A DNA stretch of 64,000 bases from Macrostomum lignano (Eukaryota), in assembly GCA_002269645.1 (NCBI GenBank), contig NIVC01002161.1, positions 124,001 through 188,000 on the forward strand. The letters run 5' to 3'. This document shows, in pieces, positions 22,138-53,568 of this stretch (within the stretch, counting starts at the first letter, position 1; every line of letters starts with the position of its first letter). Under the pieces are notes generated by a model. The model worked only from the letters and a program-made list of their open reading frames with translations. It had not been told where the DNA came from and searched no databases. The position numbers and the translations under genes were made by a program.

Positions 22138-22470
22138 ACTCAAGTCCTTTTTGATGCATTAGATTAACTCATTGGTTGAGTTTCAGTTTTCAGCTGTACT
22201 GAGCACGGTACGTGTATCTAAAAATAGCACAAAAATTACTCACTCGAGTCTCAACAAGTAACCGTAGGCTCTTACTCGTGCAACGTACAGCAGAAATGGA
22301 GAATCTCAGTACGCTTGTGATAATTTTAGCATCAAATAATTATACAGCCAGCTTAAATTATATTTAGAAATTGAAACTTCTGTTGTCTCTCTATAAATAT
22401 TCTTAGTCCCCAACCTGAAGTGTATTTCTTGTCTCCTAATCTCACTTGTATGCCACGCAATACAAAAAGC

Positions 22471-32031: not shown

Positions 32032-32697
32032 GGCGATGCAGGGCTCAGGCGAGAAACGGGAGCGAAGCGAATGGCGGAACTCCCGGCCCTCCTATATATT
32101 CGGAAATTTTTTAACGGGCTGGGACAGCCCCTTCTCTGTTCTTCGCTCCGGTGCCTGTTAAGCTCGAGACAACACCTTGCGTTGAACTGCTGTCTGCCTG
32201 CCTCTCACTCTGTCTCTCTCTCTCGTCCGCTCTTTCTCTGCGTTGTCGCCCCAAGCCTCCCGCGGAGAGTCGAGCCTTCTTGGAAAGCTGGGAGCGCGAC
32301 AGGAAAAAGGTAGGTAGCCACGGGCGCTGCTGTGCCTCCTAATTGGTCTCTCGGAGCGGCTTGTATGAGCATTGTTGCTAAGGGTAAAGCCAAGAAAACA
32401 GGAGAGCAATGACTTGCGATCGGTAGCAGGCTATGGGAGATTCTCGGGCGCTGATTGGCTGGGATGGCGTATTAGGTAACTGGGCAGAGAGTATTAATGT
32501 GCTTGTTATGCACCCGTTGAACGCAGCTCAAAACTTAAGCAGGATGAGTTAACAGTGTATGATATCAGTCGCGAGAATTGGGTCTCAAAAGCTACCTGGA
32601 TCTCAAAAAGCCACCATGAATGAACTCAAACTCATGTAGTCACCTTAAGTCTCAAGGCTAATGAAACTCAAAAAGACTTGGAGCTAAAAAAGAGAAT

Positions 32698-34796: not shown

Positions 34797-37700
34797 TCAC
34801 TCTGACAACCTGCTGCTGTCGGCCTTCAACATTCGCTGCAGCTTCTCTGCTGAATCAATCTTTTCTTCATCCTGAAAGTTTAGATGAAGATAAAAGATGG
34901 GATGAGTGATGAGATGAGTGGGTCAAGCGCAGGCTCTGATGTGCCAGCGGCCCAGGCTCGATTCCAAGTGCAGTCACATTGATCTGAGGCTAAATCTCGG
35001 CTTGGCTCTGCTCGTGCAATGCAACATGAAGTGTACATAAAGTTAGGGCCGCTGTAAACTCCTGTGTGAGTGTGAGCCTGCGCGCATGACTGTGTTTCTC
35101 CGACCCTCGGGGCCTCCGAAACTTCACAACAGCAACTCGGCCAGCGCAAGGTTTGTGTCTCTTCTTAGCTCTCTTCTCTCTCCTTTCATATCTAATCTGA
35201 TCTATCCTCTTATCTTCTCTCTCGCCTCTCACCTCTTCTCTCATCGTCATAAACACAAACAGCCTGGATTAAACATTCGCACTAAGATCAACTCACCAGC
35301 TGAAGGAGCCGCTCGCACAGGGGAAACAGGTACATAACGGTGGCTTCATCGGGCACAGACTCAAGCAGCTGGGCCCGGACAGTCAGGCCAGTCTCTGGCC
35401 AGACTCCCGAAGGCTGCATCAGTTCGCGCAGCCTCAGACCGGTATCGTGCTGCTCCTCCAGCAGGTGCAACACGCAGGCGCTCTGGCAGGCAGCCAGCGC
35501 AGGTCTCAGAGCCTGCGGAGCTCCGAATTGGTGCACCAGGCCGTCCAGCACGTCAGCATTGATGGCGGTTCTGTAGGGCCTCCTGGCGAGCTCGTGCCTG
35601 ACCTGCTGGAACTGCAGACATAGGGCCTGCTGAGTCAGGCTGAGCAGCTTGGCAACAGTGAGACTGCCCGCGTCCGGCTCCGGCAGAGCCTCAGGCAGTT
35701 GCCATGACAACGACGCAGAGGAGCTCATCAACGGGCTGCCACTCTGACAGTCGTTGGAGAACTCACGAATGGATCGTTGAAGGACAGCTTCTGGCCAATT
35801 CTGATCGCTCAGGTAGCGAAGGATGCTGATTAAGCAGTCTGTCAGCTTCCTGCATTGATGGCGGTTGGTTGGGGAAGCTGGCTTGAAGCTTCATCATTTA
35901 AGAGGATTCAAATTTTTGGTCTGTCTGAGACAGTTATATAGGTCACTTGGAGTGGTTGTGGGGGTTCGAGGTTAGGTCTCTGGTTATTTAAGTGGGTCAA
36001 AGTAGGTCTTTTAGGAGCTTATATGCCTTCTAGGGCCCGTAATTGGGTTTCAAAAGGGCCATTTTTAGGTTTCTTAGCATTGGTCCACGACACTTTAAAA
36101 TCCTATTTTAAGAGGCAGGGGTTTTGTGCACCCTGGCGCACTTTAAGTGACATTGTCACACAACCGGCGAGAGGCATTACTGCCCATTCCACCGACTCCC
36201 CTGAGCAGGCACACAAGCGCGCGGATACGTACGCAGTCATACGCACAGGCAGCGGCCCTAACTTTATTTATCCCTAGGCATGTACACTTCACTGTGCCTT
36301 GTGGGTTGCAGAGCCAAGCCGAGATTCCAGTTTAGCCTCAAATGAATGCGACTGCACTTGGAATCGAGCCTGGGCCGCTGGAACAGGTGACTACGGCAGG
36401 ATCACTACGGCATCAGGGATGTGAATTGTCAGATTCAAAAAACTCAGGATTCGCACCTGGCATAGGTGTGATCCTGCTCGTGCAGCTCTTTCAGCCTGGC
36501 CACTTCAGCTGTGCTCAGCACTTCGATGCCCTCGCCAGCCCGATGTCTGAATCGGGTCATGAGCTCCACCGGCTGTCGCTGCTGGTGGTCGCTGAACCGC
36601 GGCCTCCAGCTGGCTGGCGGCAGGGCCCAGCTGCGACCGACTGTGAGCAGGTGACCCAGGGCCGCGTCCAGCAGAGCCCAGTCCAGGTGTTCGCTGGCCT
36701 CAGACAGCCGCGGATCGCTCGGACCGGAGAACTGAGCAGCCAGCCGGTCCAGCTCGGCCTGCTCGAGGCTGACCAAGCCGCATCTGGCAGCGGTGACCGA
36801 CCGGGCAGGCAGGGTGACTGAGCACTGGCCGGTGAGCAGGTGGCCGAGTCCGCCGCCCTGCAGAGCCACAGCAGAGGCAGCCAGTAGGAAGCTGTTCGCC
36901 AGTGGGCAGAGTTGAGTAGCCAAGTCAGCTAGTTTTGAGCCCTCGGTGAGCACAGTCTCACGCAGGTGGCTGTCAGCTGATGCGCAGTCAGGCATTCCGA
37001 GTTGGCGCAGACCAGCTTGAGCAGCTGGCCACAGCGCAGCCGCTGCTTCATCTTGCTCAATCACCTCGGCAACGGTGAGCCGCTCCCAGCCGGCTCTGCT
37101 CACCTGGCCGTCAAGCACTGACACGCACCTCCTGTGCCAATCCAGCACTTTGCTGAGGTGCGCCATTTTAATCAGCGCGTCTTGATGCGCCAGCACCGCT
37201 AGTGTGAGATCCAGCCTGCCGGCCGCTGAGGAACTGGTTGCCGGGCTCAGCTGGCGGCCCAGCCACAGGGTGCGGACGTGACAGGCGGTCGACCAGTCCA
37301 CTTCAACAGCAGGCCGCAGCAGTTTCTCCGGCACCGACGGCTGCTCAGGCGGCAGGGCGGCGTCGAGTTGAGCGGCCAGAACGCGAGGATCGCCGGCCTG
37401 AGCAGCCGTCAAGCCTCGCTCAGCCAGCCGATCGGCTTTGAACTTGGCGACGCGCGCTCGACGACAGAGCAGCAGCAGAGCGGCCGAGTGGAGCAGCGAG
37501 CCAACAAACTGGGGGCACGGCTGCGAGGCGAACTGGTGCGCCAAGTCGCCAACCAGCTGCTGGCAGATCCAAGCCGGATCGTCCCAGTCCATGGCCAGCG
37601 CTGCGCGCATCTCCGAGAAGGCCTTGCCAATGAACTCGGAGACTCGGCCGGGGTGTCCGAGCTCGGCGCACAGGTCGACGGCGGCCGAGACGCTTCCGGA

Positions 37701-40700
37701 GCTCAGGCAGAGCAGCACGGATGAGGCGCTCGCGGCCCAGCGGAGTAGCGAAGTCGGCAGTCGCGGGCAGTCGGTCGCCAAATCCGACGGCATCATGACG
37801 GCTTCAAGCGGACCGGAAGAGCCGCAGAGCGGGCAGCGGCTGCTGGAGGAAAAGAACGAGGAGGCATTCTTGACGGCGACAACCGTGACGGCCAGACAGC
37901 GGGCGCAGCGGAGCGGATGAACTCCCGAAGTCAGCGGCAGCCTGGCGTCCAGCAGCAGCTTTAACTGTTTAGCAAATTCTCCGACTTTGCCGCCAGCGGC
38001 CAAGGTGGCGGCGCTGCCGAAGCGTCTTTGGCAGCCCAGCAGTTGAGCTGCTCCAGCCGACACCGCGGCAACCATGGAGCGGCCGAGCCAGTCGGCTCCG
38101 TTGTCCGGTGTCGCCTCTAGCCTGGGCTCATCTTCAACCAGGCGACTTCCCAGCAGCAGCCAGTCCAGCATGATGCGATCGGACTCCACGGAGGCTGCTG
38201 GGTTCGATTCTTCATCAATCAACAAGTCAACAAGCCGACTGTGCAGCAGACTGCCAACTCGCTGCTCTTCTGACGCAACCGGCTGTCGGTCCAGTTTTCT
38301 CAAGAACACCAGCTCAATCCAGGCGGCAATTATGGCATTGACGGACGAGCTCGAACAGTTGAGCAGTCGTTTCAAAGCTTCGGGACTGTCAGGAGCTTGA
38401 AGGAGGTCGTTCAAAGCCGAGCACACGGCGGCGTGGACTGTCTCTGAGGAGTCGGCTGAGTCAGGCAGCGGCAGGAAAGGCAGCGGCTGCCAGGAGCTGT
38501 CGGTGGCCTTCAGCGGCAGGCCGGCAGAGGTCAGGCACCTCAGGACGTCCATCAGCGGTGCCAGCCGTAGGCCGGCCTGAGCGAAGGCGACAACCAAAGG
38601 ATGGCCCGGTCGGAAACCGCTGCCTAGGTCGCTTCGTAGCTGATCAGCCAGCCTCTGTCCTTCATCGTTGAGTTCGAGTCGATTCTCGGTGAGAACGTAT
38701 GACCGAGAGGCGGTCAGTTTGAAGCGGTGCAGACGGAGCAGGTCTGTCAGGCTCGGAGTCTGCGCGCAGGCGATGCTGTTCAGCGCTGCTAGCGGTGGCA
38801 GGCCAGCCAGCAGGGTCTCGGGAATGTGCGCGGCCACCAGCTGGGCCAGGTCCCGACCAGCCGGCATTCGCAGATGCTCGTCAACCCAGGCGGTGACGGC
38901 CGAGCAGGACGCGTCTTCGTCGGCTGCATTGTCGCCGCGACCGTTGTTGCTCTGGACGGCTCGCCATAGCAACGAGAAGCAGCCGATTGGCAGCTGCTTT
39001 TCGGTCAGTTTCAACAGGAAAGCTTTCGCCAGCCCGGTTGTCAGTGCGCCACGTTCGATAGCCTGCTGCAGGTAGAGGCTCCACAGAGACTGCAGCTGCT
39101 GTTCCAGCTGGTCTTCGGGCACCGGGAGACCCTGCAGATCAGGCAGAGACTCCAGTAGAAGCTGCTCAATTCTGGCTACTCCGGACTCGCTGAACAAAGA
39201 GTCGGTGTTGCCCGTGTGCTCTGATAGAAAGCTCTGGACCCGGTGCAGACAGACAGCCGGCAAGCTGCAGGGGAGAGCCACCGTGGCAGCGAACAGGCGG
39301 CACATGCTGAGCTGCTCTGTGATTGGCTGAGGGCGGCAGGGGGTGGGAGAAGACAAGCTATATAAGCCCTAGTTTTGTTTTGCGAGCCATCAATCGCAGG
39401 CCACAACTGGTCAGATGGGTAAGATCGGGTCAGAATACTGGGTCTCAGATCTTTAGAATTGAATTTTTACATTCAGATTCACACAGATCTCCGGTGTCTA
39501 GGGTTAAGACAATATCCAGGGTCGAGATCGATATGCAGGGTCGAGATCGATATCCAGGGTCGAGATCGATATCCAGGGTCGGGATCGATATCCAGGGTCG
39601 GGATCGATATCTAGGGTCAGGATCTATATCTAGGGTCGGGATCGATATCCACGGTCGGAATCGATATCTAGGGTCGGGATCTATATCTAGGGTCGGGATC
39701 GATATCTAGGGTCGGGATCGATATCTAGGGTCGGGATCGATATCTAGGGTCAGGATCTATATCTAGGGTCGGGATCGATATCTAGGGTCAGGATCTATAT
39801 CTAGGGTCGGGATCGATATCTAGGGTCGGGATCGATATCTAGGGTCGAGACTGACAGCACCAAAGCTTAAAACACTTTTACCCCATGGCACATACATGTA
39901 GTGTGGGCTCCCCACCATCTAACACCCGGAGCACAAGATCCAGTCCACTCACCAGCTGGGCGCACTCCGAGTCCGCAAGCACAAGCAGAGCCCTGGCGGC
40001 CAGACGGTCCCAGTCGGACAGCGAGTCGGCCAGGCCGAGTTTCTGCAGGTTCTCGCTGCTCGGCAGCAGGCAGCCGGTCAGCCGTTCCGCCAGCTCGCCA
40101 CGCTCGGTCGGCTCGTCCTCATCGTCGCGGTCGAGCAGGTCTGCTGGGCAAAGTTTCGGCGAGACCGACGTCAGAATCGCCCAGAGACGCAGGGCGGTTG
40201 CCATGGGAGCAGCCAGGGCGATTGCCGACACCACGGGAGCCCAGCGGGTGCCGGCATCGGCGACTGCGGCAAGCGGCGTCATTGCCGTCAAGATGCTGTT
40301 GAACTGCTGCGACAGGTCGGTGCCGCAGGCGGACTCCGTTGCCATGGCGATGAGATCTCTAGCCAGCAAGTCGGCAGCTTTAGACTCCGGCGGCTGGTCT
40401 TCGTCGGCCAGTCCGAGCACCAACAGCCACGGCTTCAGCGCCGCCAAGGCCGCCTCAGCCGCGGCCTCCTGCGGCTCTTCGGCATCTTGGTCATCGTCGC
40501 CAGCGACAGCCGCAGCTCCGGCAGGGCTGGCAGCTGCTGAAGCCGCGGCCTTCAGATCAGCGAACACGAAGCCGGACAGCGGGAACCGAAGCGGACCGCC
40601 GCTGCCGCCGCCGCCGATGTCGCCGAGGTCGACGCGGAGCCGCCGCGACTGCACCAGGTGGCCGAGGCCGCGCACCAGGCAGTCCAGCGTGCGCGGTTCC

Positions 40701-43700
40701 AAAGCGTCGCAGTCGAAGGCGCGGGCATCGCGAAGGAGCCGCAGCAGGTCCAGCAGGCTGGCCTTGACGCGCCTGGCCAGGTGGTCGATGGCGAAATCGG
40801 CGAGGGTGGCGAATCTGGCCAGCTGGGCGGCCTCCCTGGCCAGGCCGACCATCCAGTGTCCCGGTGAGAACTCCGCAGCTTCGCCGTCGAGATCGTCGCC
40901 GCCGCAAAAGTCCTCTCTGGCAGCCCGCTTGATGGCAGCATCAATCAGAGCTTCGACAAGTCCACGCCGAGATCTGAGCAGTCGGGTGGCGGCTTCGAAC
41001 CTGGGCCCCGGCTCCAGGGCCTCGAGCAGAGCGTCCTGCAGTTTTGGGAGCGGGAGACTCGCGGCGTGATGTTGTGCTTATGAATCCCTAGCGTTAGTCT
41101 GTTAACTTCCCGGGTGTGGGAAAGTGACACACACTGCTAGGAAAGTGACACACACTGCTAGGAAAGTGACACACACTGCTAGGAAAGTGACACACACTGC
41201 TAGGAAAGTGACACACACTGCTAGGAAAGTGACACACACTGCTAGGAAAGTGACACACACTGCTAGGAAACAGATTGCTAGGAAAGTGACAGATTGCTAG
41301 GAAAGTGACACACACTGCTAGGAAAGTGACACACATTGCAAAGAAAGTGACACACATTGCTAGGAAAGTGACACACACTGCTAGGAAAGTGACACACATT
41401 GCAAAGAAAGTGACACACACTGCTAGGAAAGTGACACACATTGCAAAGAAAGTGACACACATTGCTAGGAAAGTGACACACATTGCAAGGAAAGTGACAC
41501 AGATTGCAAGGAAAGTGACGAGCGCGCTTAAAACTCTGCTCAACTAACCTGCAGCCCGGCAGTGGCCCGGGTTCGAACCGCGGCCGGGCAGCGGTCGGTG
41601 AGCAGCTGCCTCGCGGAGCTGCTGCCCACCAGATCCCGCAGAGTGTCGGCCGAGCAGCCGTCGTCAGCCGCGCCCAGCGACTCCAGACAGAGCAGGCGCC
41701 AGTCCCGCAGCAGCGGCGACCACTGCCAGGTCTGGCGGCCCCTCGAAGCGCCGCCGCCGCCGCCCAGGTGGAAAATCCACAGCAGAGCCGTCGGGCCCGC
41801 GCTGGCGGTCTCCATCAGCGACTCCAGCAGCCAGCGGAGCTGAGGCGCCGAGTCCGCGTCCACAGACGGCCGACAGCTCAGGGCGACGACGCCGCCAACT
41901 GAGTTGCGAATTGCCGCTGACAGCTCGTCTCTGCGCGATTGGTTGGGTGAGGAAAATGGTGCAGTCAGAGGGCGATTTTCCAGATGGTCAGAGGGCGATT
42001 CTTTGGATCGTCAGAGGGCGATTTTCTAGATGGTCAGAAGGCGATTTTCTAGATGGTCAGAGGGCGATTTTCTAGATGGTCAGAGGGTGATTTTCTAGAT
42101 GGTCAGTGAGCGATTTTCTAGATGGTCAGAAAGCGATTTTCTAGATGGTCAGAGGGTGATTTTCCAGAAGGTCATAGCGCTTAAAGTGCGTTTTTCCGGA
42201 TGGTCATAAGACTCTAACTCTCTCTCTCTGCCCCTCCCTCTTTCTCACCTCAGCTCGTCCTCTCCCATAAAGTCAATCAGCCGGATGATGGAGCACTCGA
42301 CGCCCAGCTGAAGCTTCCAGGCCGTGTCTTCCATCCGGGTCCTGGTGTACACCACCGTCCCCCGGACGCCGCCTCTGCCAAGCTGTTCAGCCACGTGCCG
42401 AGCCAGGGAAGTGTCCGACAGCTCCTGGAAGTATTGCCTCTGCAGGGCCTCGCGGCTCTCCGAAGGCAGTTCACTGTGCGACAGGCGCAGCACAGCGTCC
42501 GGGAAGGCCTGAGTCAGCAGGTGCTGCGGCAGCCGCTTTGCCGTCTCCTCCACAGAGTCGTCGGCGCCAACCAGCAGGTGCGAGGCGGCCAGCTCAGGAT
42601 GATAGCCGCAGAAAGTCTCTTGGGCGGCAAATTCAAGCTTTTCGTGCTCCTCCTGCCATGCCAGGCCGCTTATGCTGCGGATTGGCAGTTTTAGGTGGTT
42701 TTGGAAATGAAAAGGCTTAGCTTTCTACTGAAAGTAGAATGTAAGAGTGTTTTAACTCGATGCATGATGGGAAAAATCAGTTGCTATGGTATTTTCGTTG
42801 CTATCCGATCTCTGGGCCAAAACCAACTAACAAAAACTGTGGAATCCTTGTTGCTAAGCTGTCTCTATGCCAAAACCAGTAAACATAAACTGTGGAATCT
42901 TTGTTGCTACGCTGTCTCTAGGCCAAAACCAGTTAACATAAACTGTGGAATCATTGTTGCTATGCTGTCTCTGGGCCAAAGCCAGTTACCATAAACTGTG
43001 GTATCCTTGTTGCTATGCTGTCTCTAGGCCAAAACCACTAAACATAAACTGTGGAATCATTGTTGCTATGCTGTCTCTGGACCAAAACCAGTTAACATAA
43101 ACTGTGGTATCCTTGTTGCTATGCTGTCTCTAGGCCAAAACCAGTTACCATAAACTGTGGAATCCTTGTTGCTATGCTGTCTCTAGGCCAAAACCAGTTA
43201 AAATAAACTGTGGTATCCTTGTTGCTATGCTGTCTCTGGACCAAAACCAGTTACCATAAAATGTGGTATCCTTGTTGCTATGCTGTCTCTAGGCCAAAAC
43301 CAGTTACCATAAACTGTGGAATCCTTGTTGCTATTGATGTGGCCGCAGCCTTCTGCTGCAAGCATAGGGCCGCAGTCACATCTTAGGCACTGCTGTCCAC
43401 TGCTAGTATCTGGAATAGGAATTTTCTGCTGCCTCCATGCACTCTAAGCAGCCTTCCTTGGCGCTCAGAAGTTGCACAATATGGCGCAATCTTTAACATA
43501 GGAAATTAGGAAGTTTTGCCTAGCCTAGGGTTAGTTAGTGGAAGCCGCCAAATTTGGCGCTTGCCTTTGCTATTGTTGCCTGGCCTGCCGCGTACGATCG
43601 CTCAGTGTACGCAAGTCTAGTTAGCAGCACTCCTCCCCCGTGCGCTCTCTGGACCCTTCCCCCTTCTGCTCTCTCGTTCCTCCTGCGTCCGAGCCTCTCC

Positions 43701-46700
43701 CCATGCGTCATTCTATTTTTAGACGGAGGGTTTCGCGGACCGCGTGTCCCGAGCTGAACCCTCCCTCACGTGCAGCCTTGTGCGCACAAGCCCAAATTTG
43801 GCATGCTATTGTCACTAGTGGCTTGAGGCGACTGTCGGCGCTTCGTACAAGCTACTCTTTCCCCCATGTTTAATCAATATCTGTTGTGCATCATTATCCG
43901 CACTTTTCGGGCTGCAGTTCCATGGTCAAGCCACGGAATGCCCAAACGCTCCACCCTCCGCGTTCTATATTAACGAATGCAGGCCCGGTTGTCTGAATTT
44001 TTCCTCAGAACCGGTTTGACCGCTGGTCAGACTCGTTGAGAGCTATACTCAGCAACAGCTAAACCCCCCCCCCCCAACTCACGCTGTCACAGGGGCACAA
44101 AAGTTAAGCAATGTCTTTAAGTGGGTTGAGTTGCGCCACCCCCTCCCCAAATCCCCCATGCCGCACTTTGCGCTCGCGTCTGGCGGCGGCAGCCTTCACA
44201 CATTTCTGAGTCACCGATGGCATACAAAACTTTTGGGCCGTGTGACAGCGTGAGTTGGGGGGGGGGGGTAGCTGTTGCTGAGTATATCTCCGAGAAAGCG
44301 CTCTAGCGCCGGTTAACAGCGAAGCAAAGCTCCTGAGCAGGTCTTGGTAGAGCATTGCAGCGCTCAAGCAGAAAGCACGCTCCTGAGCAGGTCTTGGCCT
44401 GAGCAGGCCGCCCATCTGCGCGAGACGTAGCTATTAGGTTAACAGGAGTTAGGGGTCCTCTGAGAGCTAAACTCAGACACGCTCAAGCGCGGACATTTGT
44501 CAGTGCCAGGACTGCGCCGCTCAGGCCATTGCTACCATTGAGTCCTGTCACTTGGACATTGAAATATCTGAGACTAGTTGTTCTAGCGTTATTTATTTGC
44601 GTGGAGCCCAAACAGACCCCTTCATTGCGGATCCTACGGTTCCCACGCTGGTGGCAGCACTACCCTTAATTTTAGATTTCTCCCCAGTCTCAGCCCCCAT
44701 AAGTATACTCAGCAAGGTTGCTTCAGCTGCTTCAAGGTTGCTTCAAGGTTGCTTCAAGGTTACTCAGCAAGCTAGGCCAAAACCAGTTAACTTAAACTGT
44801 GGTATCTTTGTTGCTATGCTGTCTCTAGGTCAAAAAAGACTCTCTAACCCTATTACGAGTTGCTAAGACTAAGAGCAGTTTTAAGATAAAACGTCTAAAA
44901 TGGTAACAACTTTATTTGACTTAATTATTTGCTAATCACCTGGTCGCCTTAGCAACAAAACTGTCCCGAAGCTGTTCAACCGCGCCACGCTGCTCTGCGG
45001 ACAGAACGTCGCCAAATCCGAACGTTTGCTTCTCGAAACGGTTGAGAAAGGCTCTGTCCACGCGCTCCAGAGTGTCCGCCCTCACGAGCACTACGCAGCG
45101 GAACTTGTCATCAACGGAGCAATTCTTGTTAGCTTGCGTTCCCATAGCAACGCGGCAGTAGCGACACTGGTTATACTCGGAGTAGTTTTGGTTGAGCATG
45201 TCGTACAAACTGCCGTAGACGAGTTCAAAGTCCTTGAACAGCACAACAATGCCGTTCTCCATGCACATCATCACTTCATGCAGTTTTCTCAGCGCGAACT
45301 GCTCGCTGAGCTGGTCCCTATCGTATGCGCTGCCGTGAAGCACTCGGAACGGGCGCTCCTTCCGCTGAAGCACATGGGCCAGCAGGTCAAGATCCCGGTC
45401 AGTGTCCGTGATCAGCATCAAGTGCCGCGCGCTCTTGTCCTCTAGGCTCTCCATGAGCACCGATACCTAGGGGACGGTTAGTTAGCGAGTTACGAGCGTA
45501 GATCATGGATCACGTTAAGCTTCCGCACAGCAGCCTTGACCTTCTACTAACCGTCAGGCATGTCAGGCTAACCTCAAGCACGTGGAGGTTCGGTCCCGAT
45601 TTCTCTACGCCAACCCCTTTTATTTGAAGCAAAATTGCGCCTGATATGCCGAAAACCCGGGGGGGGGGGAGGGAATGGTTGTGAGGGAGTCTCACAGTCT
45701 CATTATGTCCTCCATCAAGGCAGGGTAACATAATGAGAGCTGGTGTGGGGGGTAACATAATCATCATTAATAGATAACATAATGGGGGCATAAAGTAACA
45801 TTACTATCGCTCCTATTCTTCAACCAAACATATAAAAGAGCGTTTTTCGTGGTCATCACGTCCCGTTAGCATTTGACGCTTCAAATGAAGGGATTGGCGT
45901 AGAGAAACCGGGACCGAATGTTTCGGGCTCCATTTTGACTCTTAAGTTCACATCCCCTTTAAGTGCACAAGCCCTAAATGAATGAGCTTGGCGCAAGAAT
46001 AAGATGTGCAAGACCCATACAAAAATCCGTGATAATTGATTTGGGAAAACAAGAGAATTCAAATGCAAACCTTGTCTTGTTGACGAAGTGTTTCCTTGTA
46101 AGCATTTTCCAGTCCCTCGTAAGCGAAGTCAAAATGTTCGAGAAAGTACGGCTGCTCCAGACCGGAGAAGTTCCTCACCAAGCCGCGACTGAGTATAGCC
46201 AACTTGTTCAACTGCATTCGAACATTTTCTTTAGCGAGAAACTTCACCAGGTAATAGTAGTCTCTGAGCCCGTGGAAATCCTCTTCTACTTGGCTGTCGA
46301 AGTATTCGTGACACGCCTGAGCAATTTTTTGCATATCTTCTTTGTCGATTCGACCGCCAACCTCGCCCTGACCGTCTTGCTTGTCCTGCTGCAGAACAAT
46401 GGCACTGCCTGTGATGAGCAGCTCCTCGGTTGTCATATCCGGCCTGGAGATGTGCACAGCTCGGTTCATCTTGGCCGGGTCCAGGGCCCAGTTGGACAAG
46501 CCCAGTACGGCAACACGAGCTTTGCAGGTGAATTCCGACTCTTCAGGCTCTAGGAGGCTGTGCAGAACTTTGAGCGGGTTGTGACGCGACTTCTCCGCTA
46601 GACCGATCTCGTCTAGCAGGACTACATAGCTGCGAGGAGAGGGAGGTGAACCAGTGTAAGAATGCATCTCGGATGTATTGTTAGGTCACAACTCATCATA

Positions 46701-49700
46701 AACCTCGTATGTAATGCCACTAGACCATCACTGATGATTGATTAAGCATCCCGGATTCAATACTAATTCGTCACTGATCATTGATAAAACACTGATGCCA
46801 TTCATCATGATTCAGTACTGAAGCATCCCGGATGTAATACTAGGCCATGGCCATCACTGATCATTGATCAATCACTGATGCCATTCACCAATAATCATAA
46901 ATTAAGCATCCCGGATGCAATACTAAGCCGTCACTGATTAAGAATCCTGGATATAACACTATGCCATCATTAACATCCATTCCGGACGTGATGCTCAATC
47001 ATCTATCATTCCGGACGTGATACTAGACCATCGTGCCTACCAGATGTAATGGCATCTTCATCCTTCAAATTGTGTTTTTAATGAAGTTAGTTTTTAAAGG
47101 AAAGGAAGTTTTCAAACGGGTTTTTTAGTTAGAGGTAGGGGCTGTGTGCACCCTGGCGCACTTCAAGCGACATTGTCACACAGCCGGCGAGAGGCATCAC
47201 TGCCCGTTCCGCCGACTCCCCTGAGCAGCGCACACAAGCGCAAGGATACGTACGCAGACATACGCACAGGCACACAGTCACAAAGGAGTGTACAGCGGCG
47301 GTGTTTATTGCACGAGCAGACCCAAGCCGAGATTCCAATTTAGCCCCAAATTAATGTGTCTGCATTTTGAATGCATAATCGAGACTGGACGAATGGCGCA
47401 TACATCGGTGGCTAGACCGCTAAGCTACGCCCCATCAAAGAACAGAGAGAGCTAAGCAGTACACGTATGTCAAGGGAATTTACCGATACTCATCCTTTTC
47501 CGCATCCTCATCAGCTTTCTTCGTGGCTCTGCGGAACACTTTGAAGATGCCCTCCGAAGTGGACGCCTCGGAGCCCTGGTAGCAGAAAAACCTCAGGGCT
47601 GGCAGAGCTTTGAAGAACGGATCGCGTGAGTCCCGACCTCGCAAATTGCTTCTGAGCAGAGAGACGGCCAGACTCTTGGAGCAGCCAGGCTTGCCAACTA
47701 GGAACACCGGAACTTTGTTGTAAACGCAGCACAGCAGGATAAACACGTTCTCTAGCAGGGCCGCGTTTTGAGCCACATTTTCCGGCAGCTCCATTCGATT
47801 GAGAATGTCTTCCTGCTCCTCGCGTATTGTTTTCTGTATTGACACAGCAGATTATGTACATGTACGCGTGTAATTAGCCATAAATCTACATGCACCAGTG
47901 CTCACTGACAACTCGGGTACCAAAAAGGGCATTTACATGGTTATGTAAATTTAGGAGAAGCTAACTGTACCAGATGGGGTCAGAAACGTATAAAAGCTGA
48001 TAATCAAGCTTACCTCAGCATTGTCAGACAGGAGAGACAAAATTTCGCAAGCGTATTCGGTTCGCTTGTCTGCAGACCGGATGCGCACATAGTAGCACAC
48101 GTACAAAGACATGACCAGAGGCAGAGTCGATAAACTTCGATATACATCGCTTTTCTCATGCCTCAGTTCGTAGAACCAATCGAAGAAGGCGATGAACTCG
48201 CAGCATCGGCGAACATCTCGCAAGCTGATTGCGTACTCAGTTTTCTCCAGCTTTCGAATGAATTTCTGGGACTTCCACACCGCATCGGCTAGCGCGTTCA
48301 GCAGAACCGACTCCATCTCCGGCAGCTGGTCTCGCAGCATCCGCTTGATGTACTGCTCCTCATCGGTGTCCCGCAGCCGGCCAAAGTCCCACACCAGGTC
48401 CAGAATGGACTCGGGCAGCGGGTTGACCCGGTACACCAGGTGGCGCATGCGGTCATGCTCGCGTTCGGCTAAGCGGAAGCCGGCAGTCAGAGCGGCATCC
48501 GGGTCTCTCAGCCTGTAGGGATTCGAAGCGGCCAAGAATCGCAGGTTGGGCGGCAGCGGAGCACCTAGTAGTCGCCTGTGACATATGAGCTCCTTCAGCA
48601 TGCCCAGGTGATCGCAGGTGTTAATCTCGTCGAGAAACAGCCAAACAGTTTTTGTGTCGCGGATCTTATCGCTTGTTTTGCGTTTAATAATCAGTTCCCT
48701 GGCCTCCTCGGCGGCAGACTGGGCAGTATGGATAATTTGCTCCTGCGTGGTGCCCGCGTGGAAGTTCAGCACGCGGAGGCTGGCCTCGTGTACCTGAGTT
48801 AAGTAGAAAGATATTTGCGTAAAGCAGGGGTCGGCGAACCCCGGCCCGTGGGCCACATGCGACCCGCGAAGCCTCTCTATCCGGCCCTCGGGTCCTTTGA
48901 AACTTATAATAGCGATCAGGCCCGCTCAAAGTGTGTGTCACGTCAGTTCTCTCGGATCACCTATCCTCTCTCCTTTCTTTCCTCCCTACTCTCATCGCTC
49001 CCCTCTCCCTCCTCTCCTCTCTCCTTTCTTCTCCTTTCTTCTCCCTTCTCTCCTCTCTTCCCTCTCTCTCCTCCTCTCTCCTTTCTTTCTCTCCCTTCTC
49101 TCCTCTTTTCCCTTTCTCCCTCTCTCCTTTCTTTCTCTCCCTTCTCTCCTCTCTTCCATCTCCTCTCTCCTTTCTCTCATCTCTTCTCTCCTCTCTTCTC
49201 TCCTCTTCCCTCTCCCCTCTCCTCTCCCTCTCTCCTCTCTCCCTTCTTCTCTCTCTTCTCTCAAATTTATTCCTTCTCCTTTCCACTCTCATTTTTCCCG
49301 CAACAACGAGCTGAATTTTTTTCTGGCCCTTGAGGAAGAAATGAAAAAACAGACAACTATGACTAAATATAGATTCTGTAACCGCCATAAAATCCCACAG
49401 CTGATTAGCAAGCGTTACAGCATTGCATATAAATCATACTGGCTTACTTTGCTCAAGAATCTGATCAGGCTAGTCTTTCCGCATCCGGTCTCTCCGATGA
49501 TGAGCACCGGCACGTCGCAGTCGATTCGCAGGCTGATCAGCACCATCTTGAGAAAGTTGTCAGCCGTGATGGCGTATCTTCCGCTGCCGCCGCTTGGCTC
49601 GTCGTCCTCATCAAATTGCACTCCAGGCGGCCGGTAGCCAGGGTTTCCGCGGCCAGCGATGCGTACCAGCTTCTCCAGCAGCTTGGCCTGCTTCATCTCA

Positions 49701-52700
49701 GTGTAGTCAACCAGCCGGCCGCTGTGCATGTTTCGCTCGAATAGTCGCCGGATTTCGTCAGGTACATCGCGGAGACTGCGGTAGACCAATTCGACAGCGG
49801 CAATGTCCTGCTTCTGAAACACGGGCGCCAGGTGGTTAAACGATTCCCAGCTGAGGAAGCCCTCGAATCGTTCAACGGAATCATCCGTGACCTTGGCGTG
49901 CACGCCGCGCTTCGACTCTGATTGCTTGCCTTTGGAAAGAGCAACAGATCGGCTCATGAGCTGACAAATGGACTTAAACAGAAACCGAACTAAGTCGGAT
50001 CGAATTGTTGGCGAAGCATCGCGACCGAACGCTTCTCTGACGCCGGAGATTTTGAAAAACGCGCTCGAAGACAGCTTCTTCAATTGGTCAGCTAGAACAC
50101 GAATCGTGGACGTAACAGTCAGGTAGGAATGACCTTCGAGCGGAGCCAGAGCTTTCTGCAGCCTAGAGCGACACTCGTCAGCTTCCAGTACGCTTTCTAA
50201 CGAAACTTCAACCGAATCTAAATTTCGCAAATCCAAAGCTCGCTGATACTTAGCAACTATCTGCACCGGACTTTTTGGCTCGCGTGATACCATCAGGTCG
50301 TTAAGACATCGCCACTGAAGTATCGTCACATTCTGTTCAGAGAGGCGGTTAAACAAAACGAACTGTTCCGCAAGCTCGTCATTGGCACTGTTTGCCAGCT
50401 CAATGACAACTCGGCCAGGTTTGAACGCCAGCAGATAGCTGGAGTGGCACAGCATCCCGGTGAGCAGCGCCTCAAACAGCATGGTTTCTAGAGCGCCTGC
50501 GTCATCGATCCAACCAACATCCAGATGTAGGAGGTCACGCTGCTCTAGGCCGCTTAATTTCTCCGCTAAATCGAGCTTGCCGATCTTGCCGCTGACGTGA
50601 ACGCAGCGCAGGCGGCTCTCAGTGTCAGCGGCCAGCCTGCGCACCAGCTCGGTCTTGCCGCATCCAGCCCGCTCAGACCGGACAAGTGTCACAGAGTCGC
50701 CGCAGATCGCGCCCAGGGCTGCGGAAAGTTGCAAGTCCGAGTCAAAAACGGGCTGCTGTTGCTGGCATTGGTCTCTGAAGATTCCAAGTAGACGATGTGT
50801 GCTAGCAGCTCTGCAGAATACTGCTAGACGGCCTAGGTTGCCTGCATCGCAGAGGCCTAGAATGCTGGCAGCCAGGTGGTTGAGCAGCCGCTGACTGAGC
50901 AGTTCGGTGCAAAGAATGTAGTGCACTCGGCTGGGGCTGCTAGCGCTTCGCTGAAGCAGCAGTGAAATCTCCTCCTCGGCGGTGTCAGCAGAGCAAAACA
51001 GAATCTCCGACGGTAACGGTGAATGAGTCTGTAGAGCATAGGCGAAAAAGTAATAATTTGGTTTTCAGAATTCAGTGAGCCCCGGTAAGAAAGGTACCTA
51101 AGTCAGGAAGCGTCCTAGAGTCCCTTACGTCGCCCCAGTCGTTGCAGGTAACATGGGTAAAGTGGAAAATGTGACTTTATACAACTCTAAAATGACGAGA
51201 CGTCACAGTAAAAGTCGCCAAAAAAGGTTGTCAAAGAGTCACTTAAGAGTCAATTTGAGGCGTTATATTGTTGGGACTCTGAAACGACTCTGGGACCACG
51301 CCACGCAAGTAACTCTGGGGCGCTTCTAGGCGCTTCTGAGGCATTCTAGAGTCGTTGTAGAATCAATGAATTGCGTCTAAAGCGCATGTGCGTCATTAAC
51401 GTTGCATTTCGTATTTATAACTATTCAGGCTACTTAAATCAGTAGAAATTTGAGAGCTATAACACGAAATTTGGAGACACTTTCGACTCTTACGACTCTA
51501 CAACTTATGTGATGGACTCGTAACTCAACAGTCAACTTTCCTTCGCATTACGGTCGTTTGAGTCTTTAAAAAGCCACAAAACTCGCCCAGAGTCACTAGT
51601 GAGCTGTTTGCAATGACTAGCGATTCCTGTCACGATAAGTTTTTAAACGGGAGCTTGAGCTAACGTCTTAATGCAAAGTTGCCAACTCACCTGAGACTGC
51701 CGCCACACGGTAAGGAACGCTCTAACAGAGTGCGGCTCTTTACTGGGATCAACGCGTAAAACCATCAAGCGGCCTCGTTGAACACACAGTGGAGATTCGG
51801 GGAGCTGGTGAGCGCAATCGAGTTGGCGGTCGGGAAGTGCAGGCAATTGAGACAGCCAATCAGCGAGCGCTATGATATGTTCTCGTAGGATGTCTTTCTG
51901 CCCTGTTGGGCCTAATTTTCTGACTTTGTCGACGTTGAATTCGAGGTGCGGCATATTGCCATACTGCGGCAGCCTTTGTGCATCTCTGTTAACAAATAAA
52001 AGTATTGGCCGTATATGTTGATCTGACACATTGGTTTCGGTTAGAAAGTGGTGCATTCTGAGCAGGTTTGCGCCGAATAAGTGGTTTAATAGAGGCCTTT
52101 TCTGTCTTGCCTCGCTTAGGACAGATTCCCATATTTCTAAATTACGGCGAAACTTTGCCTCTCGATCTGCCAGTTTTTTAGCCGAGCGTTTTTTGTCGGC
52201 TTCGAAGTGAAGTGGATGACCGACTGATTGCAGTTTCCTATGCAATTGGAACACCTGGGAAGAAAAGTGCAGGTTTTTCCTCTTAAATTTTACATAAATA
52301 GGTAATCCTGGTAAACAAAAATTATAGAAACTTACCCTTTCAAGAGAGTCGATCAGGTCGACAAATATTTTTAACTTCCTCCGATCATCGTCTGTGACGA
52401 GAGAGTACGAAGAGCCTACGATCATTAACACGCGGCATCGATGGTCAATCAGCTTTGACAGTGGCCAATGTTCGTCACATGTAGCATCGAATAACTCGCA
52501 AGTAGATTTAGACTCACAAATTTCAATTGAAAACATCAGATCATCTTCATCCATGCACTCAACCAAAGCTAGAGCTTGTTTTCTAGAAGAGTCGCCTCGA
52601 GAGGACAAACTGTCGTGCAGATTCTGAATAGCTACAAGATGACTAAAGCAAGTCTCAATACATTCCACGGCATCCTTGGCTCGGGCATCTGAGACAACGA

Positions 52701-53499
52701 AAATCTGATCCGAGCCCTCGAGGCCAAAGTTAAGAGCCATTGCCAGTTCTTCCATGCTTGTCTTCATTCCCAAGATGCCTTCTCCTGATTTGATCTTGTC
52801 AATTAGCATTCGGAGCATTTCCTGCAGCTTGATGAGAGCATTGATGTGAGCAAAGCTCACCTCTTCTGAATCTTCGTCATTGGCGGCGTCGAACAACTGC
52901 TGAAAGTCTGAGTTAACCTGAGCTATCAAGAATTTGAATACATTACTTCGCTCACAAAGTTTTGTTAGGATGTTCCAGTGATTTTGTGACAGTGGCTTGC
53001 ACAGCTTTACTAAAAAATTTGCGGCCTCATTGAAATCTTTTACTAAGCTTCCGCCTCGACATTTCCTAAAATATTTCTCACAAACAGCTAGCACGGAGGG
53101 CTCAAACAAATGTTGCAGTGGTGACTGCAAGAGCAGCTGGCAGTAGTGCTTCCATGTCTTTCGGTACTTCAAATTTTCAACCAGCTCCTTGTCTGATAAA
53201 GCTGGTGACTCATAACCGAGAAACTGCTGAGCCAAATATTGCTCCAATTCAATGTCTGTCTTTGGAGAAAACTTTTTCTTGACATCCGCAACGTTTTCAT
53301 GCTTTAAACTTCGTTGTAGAAACTGTTTGTAGCGATCAATAACATCCCTGAGAACATCAAATACTTCGGCAACAGTATAGGCCCCCTGGTCCAGTGAGTA
53401 AATCTCAGTGAATATGGTGGATTCAAGAAGGCCGCTCAGATCACGAGCAGTTTTGGCGTACCCTTGAAATACTTTCTCTAGAAAGTTCGTTGCCTTCAT
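34797..53499 (-). CDS. rnf213: RNF213/mysterin-like giant AAA+ ATPase, 5'-partial, about 3650 codons visible
   Basis: Exons in transcript order: 52336-53499+, 51691-52254, 49448-51028, 48014-48793, 47484-47833, 46071-46629, 44940-45466, 42249-42674, 41549-41930, 39896-41035, 36457-39311, 35297-35849, 34797-34871. All junctions are GT-AG with compatible phases (10956 nt). RNF213-type motifs: PLPSEILFCSADTAEEEISLLL, SERAGCGKT, IIGETGCGKT, FLDEINTC, VGKPGCSKS, LLDEIGLAE, LSNWALDPAKMNRA, TFCGYHP, PDAVLRL. A paralogue rather than a strict orthologue cannot be excluded. Confidence 0.9.
34916..35090 (+). mobile_element. SINE family A, 3'-truncated copy in the last RNF213-like intron
   Basis: Contains CCCAGGCTCGATTCCAAGTGCAGTCACATT...TCTCGGCTTGGCTCTGC...AAAGTTAGGGCCGCTGT matching 7986-8347. 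Confidence 0.8.
36112..36410 (-). mobile_element. SINE family A copy (intronic)
   Basis: Reverse complement of the family A tail, body and B box; 5' head diverged. Confidence 0.85.
39515..39850. repeat. 19-bp intronic minisatellite (GGGTCGGGATCGATATCTA)
   Basis: In RNF213-like intron 39312-39895. Confidence 0.92.
41115..41520. repeat. 21-bp intronic minisatellite (AGGAAAGTGACACACACTGCT)
   Basis: In RNF213-like intron 41036-41548. Confidence 0.92.
41970..42200. repeat. 23-bp intronic minisatellite (TTTTCTAGATGGTCAGAGGGCGA)
   Basis: In RNF213-like intron 41931-42248. Confidence 0.88.
42780..44830. repeat. 53-bp intronic minisatellite interrupted by a ~1.4-kb insert (43335-44770)
   Basis: Unit AAAACCAGTTAACATAAACTGTGGAATCCTTGTTGCTATGCTGTCTCTAGGCC; breaks after GTTGCTAT at 43334 and resumes near 44771. 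Confidence 0.85.
44046..44284. mobile_element. MITE with ~58-bp TIRs, TA-flanked (Tc1/mariner-like)
   Basis: TACTCAGCAACAGCTA-(C)n-AACTCACGCTGTCACA..CAAAAGTT and its near-perfect inverse; TA on both sides. The exact end is ambiguous by 2 bp because of TATA. Confidence 0.7.
46700..47045. repeat. Degenerate tandem repeat (AAGCATCCCGGATG.AATACTA..CC..TCACTGATCATTGAT)
   Basis: Several diverged copies in RNF213-like intron 46630-47483. Confidence 0.6.
47129..47370 (-). mobile_element. SINE family A, 5'-truncated copy (intronic)
   Basis: Reverse complement of the family A tail and body; tRNA head missing. Confidence 0.8.
48825..48900 (+). mobile_element. hAT/Charlie-type transposon end
   Basis: CAGGGGTCGGCGAACC..CGGCCCGTGGGCCACATGCGACCCG resembles Charlie/MER58-type termini; no matching right end was found. 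Confidence 0.6.
48960..49262. repeat. CT-rich low-complexity tract
   Basis: Almost pure pyrimidine; intronic. Confidence 0.9.
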
Positions 53500-53568
53500 C
53501 AGCGAAATTTTTCTTCAACTTCCGCTGACGTTTTCTTAAACCTTGCCTGGTAATCTGAAATGTCATCC

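What the first reader, a model, noticed from the sequence alone, without database searches (positions are those of the whole stretch)
36457..39311. RNF213-like ATPase with a half RING and no RZ finger: a possible non-ligase mysterin
Seen: the AAA core keeps intact Walker motifs (GETGCGKT/FLDEINT, GKPGCSKS/LLDEIGL). In the E3 module only the second half of a RING remains (HPLRCARC...RCPLC, about 37820-37930; no upstream CxxC). About 185 aa later the sequence already resembles the late RNF213 region (LWLGRQL...LTLAVLAHQDALIKMAHLSKVLDWHRR), and no CxxGH...GECG...CxxC RZ motif occurs anywhere. All of this sits in one stop-free 2855-nt exon, so a missed exon cannot explain the absence. Known: vertebrate RNF213 uses the RZ finger to ubiquitylate bacterial LPS, and the RING-to-CTD distance there is several hundred residues. 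Inference: a lineage-specific paralogue that may still sense or coat targets but has lost or outsourced ubiquitin transfer (decoy, scaffold or partner-dependent).
Basis: partly seen in the sequence, partly recalled or inferred. Interest (0 to 1): 0.75.

Follow-up and report, generated by a model that had tools for sequence, protein, structure and literature searches.

The report
Flatworm RNF213-like ATPase, decayed RZ finger
This is a flatworm (Macrostomum lignano) gene for a giant RNF213/mysterin-type ATPase that has no RING domain, and its only zinc-type motif is most likely a worn-down RZ finger lacking the catalytic cysteine and histidine, a state that several other non-vertebrate relatives share.

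Summary
A stop-free exon lies on the minus strand at 36457-39326. The quoted Walker motifs, the HPLRCARC...RCPLC motif and the absence of a canonical RZ or RING are all real.

The gene is 97% identical to Macrostomum lignano A0A1I8JA77. Its AAA core is clearly RNF213 (E 1.7e-106 to mouse RNF213, with the AAA3 and AAA4 Walker A/B motifs aligned).

The "half RING" reading is probably wrong. The motif is a complete four-Cys knuckle pair, CARC-x20-CPLC, 642 residues from the C-terminus. The RZ finger sits 674-679 residues from the end in mouse and human.

The closest relatives are RING-less genes from metagenome and genome assemblies. Each carries one zinc motif at the same place (CxCG...CPxC). 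Their profile aligns that motif onto a Pfam-verified RZ finger of the fungus Piromyces (E 4e-11). The window's region downstream of the motif matches the family profile collinearly (E 2e-4, above all 500 shuffles).

The flatworm motif lacks the loop nucleophile Cys and the distal His, as do three of the seven relatives that carry the motif. Loss of RZ-type ubiquitin transfer is therefore plausible but untested. It is not specific to this lineage. Structure prediction failed (pLDDT 41 and 52).

The parts
51646..53514 (-). Open 623-codon segment holding the most 5' coding part present in the window (region before the AAA core). The 5' end of the gene is missing: an N gap lies at 53569-54272 and satellites lie beyond it.
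   Evidence: P0121 residues 239-562 map here. P0121 residues 1-238 have no match in the window.
49448..51028 (-). Exon ending with the AAA3 Walker A motif GETGCGKT (49472-49495).
   Evidence: Donor AAA|gtaagc.
48005..48793 (-). AAA3 exon with Walker B FLDEINT (48617-48637). The acceptor at 48793 (ctcag|GTACAC) keeps about 22 residues that align with mouse RNF213 but are skipped in the P0121 gene model.
47471..47836 (-). AAA4 exon with Walker A GKPGCSKS (47672-47695).
46062..46628 (-). AAA4 exon with Walker B LLDEIGL (46599-46619).
44942..45466 (-). AAA-core exon. The significant alignment to mouse RNF213 ends here.
42248..42676 (-). Exon for the late AAA core. GC content rises to 0.63 here.
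41549..41932 (-). Exon for the late AAA core (GC 0.72).
39953..41041 (-). Exon at the hinge / start-of-E3 position. Ala/Leu-rich (GC 0.69), with no detectable homologue outside Macrostomum.
36457..39326 (-). The finding's large exon (956 codons), at the position of the E3 module.
37824..37907 (-). CARC-x20-CPLC four-Cys zinc-knuckle pair, 642 residues from the C-terminus. Interpreted as a decayed RZ finger with no loop Cys, no GECG, no IGG and no distal His.
37050..37208 (-). LTLAVLAHQDALIKMAHLSKVLDWHRRCVSVLDGQVSRAGWERLTVAEVIEQD: the helix region conserved in the RNF213-like family about 230-260 residues after the RZ-position finger.
35291..35849 (-). Probable terminal exon, ending ...CERLLQLVS followed by a stop. 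A consensus donor at 35297 is used by the P0121 model to fuse onto the neighbouring GPCR exons, which is probably an artefact.

Best explanation
The minus strand from about 35.3 to 53.5 kb carries at least 11 exons, about 3650 codons, with the 5' end missing. They encode a Macrostomum lignano member of the RNF213/mysterin family of giant dynein-like AAA+ proteins.

Shown: the AAA3 and AAA4 Walker A/B motifs are intact and align with mouse RNF213, so ATP binding and hydrolysis are expected (the activity itself is inferred). There is no RING domain. The only Cys cluster is CARC-x20-CPLC.

Inferred, about 0.65-0.7: this cluster is the homologue of the RZ finger, not of the RING. It keeps four possible zinc ligands. 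It has lost the loop nucleophile (human C4516), the general-base His (H4537) and the GECG and IGG signatures.

Inferred, weaker: the protein can no longer accept ubiquitin from an E2 by the RZ transthiolation route and has no RING route either. It would then act as an ATP-driven sensor or scaffold that works without ligase activity or needs a partner ligase.

The same RING-less architecture with a variable or decayed RZ occurs in its closest non-vertebrate relatives. This is recurrent decay of an ancestral RZ finger, not a flatworm-specific novelty.
For: - Identity and family. The exon has a single hit among 1.84 billion representatives: P0121 = UniRef A0A1I8JA77, M. lignano, 97% identity. The AAA core matches mouse RNF213 at E 1.7e-106 over 784 collinear residues with all four Walker motifs aligned, while midasin reaches only 2e-11. 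The best relative in the large protein collection is 43% identical at E 8e-168.
- No RING and no canonical RZ.
- Position. The motif lies 642 residues from the C-terminus. Mouse ZF2/RZ spans Cys4451-Cys4474 of 5148 residues and mouse RING spans 3940-3999 (10.1101/2021.05.10.443411; PMC7311170). The human RZ ligands are C4505, H4509, C4525 and C4528 of 5207 (PMC11549300).
- Relatives. The C-terminal reading frames of L001, P0122/L008, L007, L009 and L013 carry one zinc motif each, 690-770 residues from the C-terminus where that end is held (L001, L007, L013), and show no RING pattern.
- Link to RZ. The profile of L001, P0122 and L007 hits the Pfam-verified RZ reading frame of Piromyces (PF20173, 6e-11) at E 4.3e-11 with the zinc motifs aligned. 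A coral RNF213 product also carries PF20173.
- Link to the window. A 9-sequence family profile matches the window's C-terminal part at E 2e-4 (5.2 bits, against a best of -1.6 in 500 shuffles). Further weak collinear hits go to L013 and L012. Smith-Waterman against P0122 gives z = 4.7. An unsupervised MAFFT --add run puts CARC one column from the family's CxCG start, and puts CPLC and the Trp of DWHRR in exactly the family's columns.
Against: - Neither the exon nor the profiles of its relatives show any significant similarity to the vertebrate RNF213 E3 module or CTD. The link runs window -> metagenomic/assembly relatives -> fungal RZ.
- The window-to-family link rests on one 50-residue region plus collinearity. 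hhalign alone gave only E 0.1-0.26.
- The zinc motif itself is not recognised by PF20173. Its best PDB hit is the second half of the TRIM34 RING, at E 0.44.
- AlphaFold2 without an alignment was uninformative (pLDDT 41 and 52, with the motif region below 45).
- Zinc binding and lack of ligase activity are not tested. Another Cys could serve as nucleophile, for example the one 18 residues after CPLC in DCPRLP.
- No transcript evidence was available.
Confidence: 0.6

Rival explanations
1. One reading: the motif is the surviving distal half of the RNF213 RING (H-x3-C-x2-C ... C-x2-C), and the RZ finger was deleted outright.
For: The pattern H-x3-C-x2-C-x20-C-x2-C fits RING ligands 4-8. The only PDB hit of the motif region is the second half of the TRIM34 RING (E 0.44). 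The relatives' motif also weakly hits the second half of the MYLIP RING (E 2.8).
Against: - These hits are not significant, and a canonical RZ query gives equally weak hits to IAP RINGs, so they do not discriminate.
- The position fits RZ (642 versus 674-679 residues from the C-terminus) and not RING (1149).
- It would need roughly a 500-residue deletion after the motif and a 290-residue insertion before it.
- Downstream anchors are collinear with relatives whose motif aligns to a verified RZ.
Confidence: 0.1
2. The C-terminal 1500 residues or so are not homologous to the RNF213 E3 module at all (domain replacement or extreme drift), and the four-Cys motif is an unrelated zinc ribbon.
For: - There are no hits to any RNF213 E3/CTD.
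- GC content jumps from 0.51-0.55 in the AAA exons to 0.61-0.72 in the C-terminal exons.
- The best Pfam hints for the motif are generic zinc knuckles: DnaJ CXXCXGXG at 0.13 and Sec23/24 at 0.19.
Against: - The family profile matches at E 2e-4 and at the collinear place, with additional collinear weak hits.
- The length after the AAA core (about 1510 residues versus 1743 in mouse) and the distance from motif to C-terminus are conserved.
- The C-termini of the relatives are just as invisible to the vertebrate RNF213 chains in the PDB searches, yet they contain a demonstrable RZ homologue.
Confidence: 0.12
3. The protein is still an active transthiolating E3. It uses another cysteine (one of the four motif Cys, or the Cys 18 residues downstream in DCPRLP), or another part of the E3 module.
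For: - The CTD is the E2 docking site in mouse RNF213 (10.1101/2021.05.10.443411), and the region at that position is retained in length here.
- The family shows flexible first-knuckle chemistry: C-x3-H, CxCG, CxxCxCG.
- Loop Cys positions vary among the relatives.
Against: The 20-residue loop has no Cys. No His lies within 40 residues after CPLC. In mouse RNF213, mutating the zinc ligands or C4462 abolishes activity (same preprint). None of this was tested here.
Confidence: 0.15
4. Assembly or gene-model artefact, or a decaying pseudogene copy in the duplicated M. lignano genome.
For: - There is an N gap at 53569-54272, and the first 238 residues of P0121 are absent from the window.
- A stretch of about 25 residues is read in a different frame in P0121.
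- The P0121 model fuses to a GPCR.
Against: - About 3650 codons are open across 11 exons with canonical splice signals.
- The chance of the 974-codon run is 1.4e-11.
- The two copies differ by only 0.2-3.9% at the protein level in every exon.
Confidence: 0.03

Closest known systems
Vertebrate RNF213 / mysterin (mouse 6TAX, 7OIK; human 8S24)
   Same: The dynein-like AAA core is shared, with AAA3 and AAA4 Walker A/B conserved and collinear over 784 residues (E 1.7e-106). Total length after the AAA core is similar. One zinc motif lies about 650 residues from the C-terminus, where the RZ finger sits.
   Different: There is no RING. The zinc motif is CxxC-x20-CxxC instead of C-x3-H-x6-C-x8-C-x2-C-x8-H, with no nucleophile Cys, no general-base His, and no GECG or IGG. 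The E3 module and CTD are not detectable by sequence. The 5' end of the gene (where a stalk/CBM20 region would lie) is not present in the window.
RING-less RNF213-like genes from metagenome and genome assemblies (L001, L008/P0122, L007, L009, L013, L012)
   Same: These are the closest AAA cores (up to 43-45% identity). They share the architecture: no RING, and a single zinc motif in the C-terminal part, 690-770 residues from the C-terminus where that end is held (L001, L007, L013). They also share the conserved helix region about 250 residues after the motif. L007 (CLRC-x19-CSRCG) and L013 (CMTC...CCPLC) resemble the window's CARC-x20-CPLCG, and L001, L007 and L009 likewise lack a loop Cys.
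   Different: All of them keep the CxCG first knuckle, which the window lacks. P0122 and L013 keep a loop Cys. Their C-termini are mutually recognisable (E 1e-13 to 1e-137), whereas the window's is only marginally so.
RZ-type zinc finger (Pfam PF20173; RNF213 and ZNFX1)
   Same: Two zinc knuckles separated by a loop, with the second being CPxCG-like. The location within an RNF213-family protein is the same.
   Different: It fails the Pfam model (no hit at E<=10, while the human RZ scores 5.8e-19 and the Piromyces RZ 6e-11). The catalytic Cys and His are absent.
Midasin (Rea1/MDN1)
   Same: The P-loop region of a dynein-like AAA protein.
   Different: Only a 45-residue P-loop stretch matches (E 2e-11), against 784 residues for RNF213.

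Membership tests
RNF213 / mysterin family | Dynein-like AAA core in which AAA3 and AAA4 carry Walker A and B motifs | tested here: met
   GETGCGKT/FLDEINT and GKPGCSKS/LLDEIGL align with the mouse RNF213 motifs over 784 collinear residues (E 1.7e-106).
RNF213 / mysterin family | RNF213, not another AAA family, is the closest relative | tested here: met
   All top PDB hits are RNF213; midasin reaches only 2e-11. Named hits in the protein collection are RNF213 or R213A-like.
RNF213 / mysterin family | RING domain inserted in E3-back | tested here: not met
   No Pfam RING in the exon or in P0121. No RING pattern in six frames. Only two CxxC knuckles occur in 3653 residues.
RNF213 / mysterin family | Canonical RZ finger (CHCC zinc ligands, loop nucleophile Cys, distal His) | tested here: not met
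   No PF20173 hit at E<=10, with the positive control at 5.8e-19. No Cys in the 20-residue loop and no His after CPLC.
RNF213 / mysterin family | A zinc finger at the RZ position, about 650-700 residues from the C-terminus, followed by a conserved C-terminal region | tested here: met
   The motif lies 642 residues from the C-terminus. The family profile matches at the collinear site (E 2e-4). MAFFT --add aligns the knuckles and the Trp helix.
RNF213 / mysterin family | Fold of the E3-back / E3-shell / E3-core / CTD domains | tested here: inconclusive
   AlphaFold2 without an alignment gave mean pLDDT 41 for 1193 residues and 52 for 156 residues. There is no sequence hit to the RNF213 chains.
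RNF213 / mysterin family | N-terminal stalk with a CBM20 domain | not testable with these tools
   The 5' end of the gene is not in the window (N gap 53569-54272; P0121 residues 1-238 are unmatched). Pfam finds nothing in the 623-codon 5' segment.
RING finger | Eight cross-braced zinc ligands (C3HC4 or C3H2C3) | tested here: not met
   Only H plus four Cys are present, with no upstream CxxC within the exon. There is no Pfam RING, and the TRIM34 hit is at E 0.44.
E3 ubiquitin ligase activity (transthiolation) | A catalytic Cys that accepts ubiquitin from an E2 | not testable with these tools
   This needs biochemistry. The sequence shows only that the canonical residue is absent.

The most novel reading that the evidence does not exclude
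RNF213-like AAA+ machines outside vertebrates form a RING-less lineage in which the ancestral RZ finger has repeatedly lost its nucleophile. On this reading the flatworm protein, L001, L007 and L009 have lost the Cys, and L010 has lost the whole finger. That would give natural 'pseudo-ligase' mysterins whose conserved function is ATP-dependent sensing or coat/scaffold formation, not ubiquitin transfer. It would imply that the ATPase core, not the ligase, is the family's ancestral and indispensable activity.
Probability: 0.3. Interest if true: 0.6.

Novelty: new variant of a known kind. Interest (0 to 1): 0.42.

Why it matters
In mammals, RNF213's antibacterial ubiquitylation of LPS and its coat formation on bacteria depend on the RZ finger Cys and on ATP, while the RING is dispensable (PMC11549300). 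Natural family members that keep the ATPase but have lost the RING and the RZ catalytic residues would show which activities are ancestral. They would also be ready-made separation-of-function variants. M. lignano is amenable to RNAi and transgenesis (from my own knowledge), so such a gene could be tested in vivo. The survey also indicates that RZ is ancient (present in a fungus and a coral) and that none of the non-vertebrate relatives sampled carries a RING. I found no paper in the searched library describing either point.

Tried and rejected
- The plus-strand frame of the given coordinates is full of stops.
- Pfam and PDB sequence searches of the exon found nothing.
- The word-seeded homologue search of the exon found nothing. 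The exhaustive phmmer search of 1.84 billion representatives found only the M. lignano orthologue.
- BLASTP of the exon against the C-terminus of L001 was not significant.
- hhalign of window+P0121 against the relatives' alignments gave E 0.1 and 0.26. It picked the right region but is not significant alone.
- Profiles of the relatives' C-termini against the PDB gave no RNF213 hit, and neither did L001 alone.
- AlphaFold2 on the 1193-residue C-terminal part and on 156 residues around the motif gave low confidence. I therefore ran no fold search, because the matches would be meaningless.
- The search for RNF213 sequences in the eLife supplement found none held as text.
- The fish locus L011 was cut off by the contig end. 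The Mytilus, Rotaria and Amoebophrya loci showed no finger in the 10 kb held downstream of the AAA piece.
- The UniProt name 'CARD domain-containing' for P0121 was not reproduced by Pfam.
- The idea that the C-terminal half evolves much faster between the two Macrostomum copies was rejected. Once the frameshifted stretch and the alignment edges are removed, the big exon differs by about 1.4%, within the 0.2-3.9% range of the other exons.

Full report
**What is there**

The finding's coordinates are open only on the minus strand. The plus-strand frame is full of stops. The reverse frame gives the quoted peptides. The stop-free run is 36447-39368, 974 codons. Splice signals define an exon at 36457-39326 (tcag|CCAATC ... 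GCCAG|gtgcga). From the exon's base composition, the chance of 974 open codons is 1.4e-11. The longest open run in 2000 shuffles was 448 codons.

All quoted motifs are present:
- GETGCGKT at 49472-49495
- FLDEINT at 48617-48637
- GKPGCSKS at 47672-47695
- LLDEIGL at 46599-46619
- HPLRCARC...RCPLC, with the first to last Cys at 37824-37907

**Whose gene it is**

An exhaustive phmmer search of 1.84 billion representative proteins with the exon found exactly one protein. It is P0121, 4020 residues, 97% identical. P0121 is UniRef A0A1I8JA77 of the flatworm Macrostomum lignano.

P0121 maps to minus-strand exons from 53382 down to 35297. It then continues into 32091-31678 and 30387-29365. Those last two exons are a Srw-type 7TM receptor by Pfam.

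The RNF213-like reading frame reaches a stop two codons past a consensus donor at 35297 (...LLQLVS-stop). The weak match to L012 (E 0.008) also ends about 35 residues before both C-termini. The receptor fusion is therefore probably a gene-model artefact.

The first 238 residues of P0121 have no match in the window. An N gap (53569-54272) and kilobases of simple satellites lie where the 5' end should be.

**Family membership of the ATPase**

The concatenated AAA3-AAA5 region matches mouse RNF213 chains at E 1.7e-106 over 784 collinear residues. All four motifs line up:
- GETGCGKT with GETGCGKT
- WLFLDEINT with ILFFDEANT
- GKPGCSKS with GKPGSSKS
- VVLLDEIGLAE with VVLDEVGLAE

Midasin reaches only 2e-11, on the P-loop stretch. 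In the 5.8-billion-protein collection, 548 proteins match at E<=1e-10. They include Mytilus and Mya 'RNF213', a coral 'Ring finger protein 213', another Macrostomum protein, and glomeromycete and chytrid fungal proteins. The best is 43% identical at E 8e-168. The AAA core is therefore an unambiguous RNF213-family core.

**No RING and no canonical RZ**

Pfam finds only AAA domains (and the fused 7TM) in P0121, and nothing in the exon. The RZ model PF20173 scores the real human RZ at 5.8e-19. That sequence is HWYTCPNGHPCSVGECGRPMEQSICIDCHAPIGGIDHK, taken from the PDB chain. The same model gives nothing for the window motif even at E<=10. Regular expressions for RZ and RING match nowhere in the six frames of the window. 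In the stitched protein the only paired CxxC knuckles are CARC and CPLC. Such a pair arises in 2.3% of shuffles of the whole protein.

**Is the motif half a RING or a decayed RZ?**

The motif is a complete four-Cys unit, CARC-x20-CPLC. Four lines of evidence favour the RZ position.

1. Position. The motif lies 642 residues from the C-terminus.
   - The mouse RZ/ZF2 ligands are Cys4451, His4455, Cys4471 and Cys4474 of 5148 residues, so the finger ends 674 residues from the end. The nucleophile is Cys4462 and the proposed base is His4483 (10.1101/2021.05.10.443411).
   - The human ligands are C4505, H4509, C4525 and C4528, with C4516 and H4537 as nucleophile and base (PMC11549300).
   - The mouse RING is at 3940-3999, 1149 residues from the end (PMC7311170).
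   - Reading the motif as a RING would need about a 500-residue deletion after it and about a 290-residue insertion before it. The RZ reading needs only about 230 fewer residues before it.

2. Relatives. The closest AAA cores come from genes in metagenome and genome assemblies, most of them without introns in the part read. Their C-terminal reading frames can be read through the finger position: L001, its paralogue L008/P0122, L007, L009 and L013. The C-terminal end itself is held for L001, L007 and L013. None has a RING pattern. Each has one zinc motif, 690-770 residues from the C-terminus in L001, L007 and L013:
   - L001: YLCSCGTVFVTTRGNICPSC
   - P0122: HLCSCGTAFVCDDEASGNTSCPNC
   - L009: FCACGTAFVSTATTGSPRCPNC
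   - L007: CLRCGCGFVFIIDNNRQSTMRRSCSRCG
   - L013: CMTCKCGYRLITCNKYRDDMCCPLC

   The L007 and L013 forms (CxxC-x-CG ... CxxC) are close to the window's CARC ... CPLCG.

3. These motifs are RZ homologues. The chytrid Piromyces finnis has, downstream of its RNF213-like AAA gene, a reading frame with YICSCGKSYYIDNCTQPNSTSNCSFCKKIIGGTNH. It passes PF20173 at 6e-11. A profile of L001, P0122 and L007 hits that reading frame at E 4.3e-11 (best of 500 shuffles 6.1 bits, real score 27.2). The zinc motifs and the following helices align. A coral RNF213 product also carries PF20173. RZ is therefore ancestral in the family, and CxCG is an accepted variant of the first knuckle.

4. The window is collinear with the family downstream of the motif.
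   - The stretch LTLAVLAHQDALIKMAHLSKVLDWHRR... (nt 37050-37208) is the best match of every comparison I ran: hhalign E 0.1 and 0.26, hmmsearch with 2, 3, 6 and 9 sequences at E 0.014, 0.021, 0.0097 and 0.0002, and Smith-Waterman against P0122 at z = 4.7.
   - With the 9-sequence profile the real score is 5.2 bits, against a best of -1.6 in 500 shuffles.
   - The distance from the second knuckle to the conserved Trp is 231 residues in the window, 251 in L001 and 260 in P0122.
   - Further weak hits to L013 (window 814-899 with L013 1373-1461) and to the last piece of L012 (window 1006-1158 with 112-260 of 297) are also collinear.
   - An unsupervised MAFFT --add run places CARC one column from the family's CxCG start. 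It places CPLC and the Trp in exactly the family's columns.

The evidence for the RING reading is limited to non-significant hits: the second half of the TRIM34 RING at E 0.44, and MYLIP for the relatives' motif at E 2.8. A canonical RZ query gives similar weak hits to IAP RINGs, so these hits do not discriminate.

**What the motif lacks**

The 20-residue loop (LAVTVVAVKNASSFFSSSSR) has no Cys. No His follows CPLC within 40 residues. The GECG and IGG signatures are absent.

Among the sampled relatives, the loop Cys is present in human, mouse, Piromyces, P0122 and L013. It is absent in L001, L007, L009 and the window. One AT-rich relative of unknown origin, L010, has no finger at all in the corresponding region.

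**Limits**

- Neither the window's C-terminal half nor the relatives' profiles reach the vertebrate RNF213 E3 module or CTD by sequence.
- AlphaFold2 without an alignment failed. Mean pLDDT was 41 for 1193 residues and 52 for 156 residues, and the motif region stayed below 45. I therefore ran no fold search.
- Zinc binding, ATPase activity, ligase activity and expression are all untested.
- A stretch of about 25 residues (about 37431-37505) is read in different frames in the window and in P0121. Either it is unconstrained or one of the assemblies has indel errors.

**Mechanism proposed**

- Shown: an RNF213-family AAA core with catalytic motifs intact, no RING, no canonical RZ, and a four-Cys motif at the RZ position.
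- Inferred: the motif is a decayed RZ finger that may still bind zinc but cannot form the RZ thioester. The protein would then act as an ATP-dependent sensor or scaffold, or depend on a partner ligase.
- Alternative: another Cys may have taken over. One candidate lies 18 residues after CPLC.

**Comparison and novelty**

The gene belongs to the RNF213 family by its ATPase core. It fails two features of vertebrate RNF213: the RING and the canonical RZ. It shares its RING-less, variable-RZ architecture with its nearest non-vertebrate relatives.

I found no paper in the searched library on RNF213 in Macrostomum, or on the domain evolution of invertebrate RNF213. I rate this as a new variant of a known kind, of moderate interest.

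Noticed in passing
window 35291-42676 versus 44942-51984 (minus-strand exons): GC content changes sharply within one gene. The AAA exons are at 0.51-0.55 and the C-terminal exons at 0.61-0.72, which makes them Ala/Leu/Arg-rich. This may help explain why the C-terminal half is invisible to sequence searches.
   Followed up: partly
window about 37431-37505 (-): About 25 residues are read in different frames in the two copies. The window has QFVGSLLHSAALLLLCRRARVAKFKAD and the 97%-identical P0121 has QFRRLAAPLGRSAAALSVERASPTG, and both are open. Either compensating indels are tolerated here or an assembly has errors.
   Followed up: partly
window 35297 donor; 31678-32091 and 29365-30387 (-): The public gene model P0121 splices the RNF213-like gene onto a Srw-type 7TM receptor (Pfam 9.5e-08). 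The RNF213-like frame stops two codons after that donor, and its weak match to relative L012 ends at the equivalent point, so the fusion looks like a model artefact.
   Followed up: partly
window 48725-48793 (-): The P0121 model skips about 22 residues (VHEASLRVLNFHAGTTQEQIIHTAQ) that align with mouse RNF213 between Walker A and Walker B of AAA3. An acceptor ctcag|GTACAC at 48793 would include them.
   Followed up: partly
window 22375-22689 and 23900-24244 (+): Two exons of a Ras-superfamily small GTPase, Rho-like by eye (Pfam Ras 2e-15 and 7e-20).
   Followed up: partly
window 53569-54272; 54273-61518: An N gap is followed by very large, strand-asymmetric simple repeats: (CTCTCTC)n, an 11-mer CTCTCTTGTCT repeated about 300 times, and (GTCT)n over about 2.1 kb. 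They create long spurious ORFs of up to 1197 codons in several frames. They sit where the 5' end of the gene should be.
   Followed up: partly
window 41119-41519, 39512-39847, 42797-43334: Minisatellites of 21, 19 and 53 bp lie inside or beside introns of the gene. The 21-mer array reads as a Cys/His-rich repeat (CHFPSNV) and gives false zinc-motif hits.
   Followed up: yes
L010 1549-4173; L001, L007, L009 zinc motifs: Among RNF213-like relatives the RZ finger varies. It is canonical in Piromyces and a coral. It is the CxCG type with a loop Cys in P0122 and L013, and without one in L001, L007 and L009. It is absent from the corresponding region of the AT-rich relative L010.
   Followed up: partly
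P0121 residues 1-238 (not in the window): UniProt names the orthologue 'CARD domain-containing protein'. Pfam finds no CARD in the whole protein or in the first 238 residues, even at E<=10.
   Followed up: partly
window 20834-21133 (-): A 100-codon open segment is rich in Cys pairs (CAVCMARDLVFSRDKCHYEDCSPICTFCG) and has no Pfam hit. It lies beyond the GPCR gene and is not part of the RNF213-like gene.
   Followed up: partly
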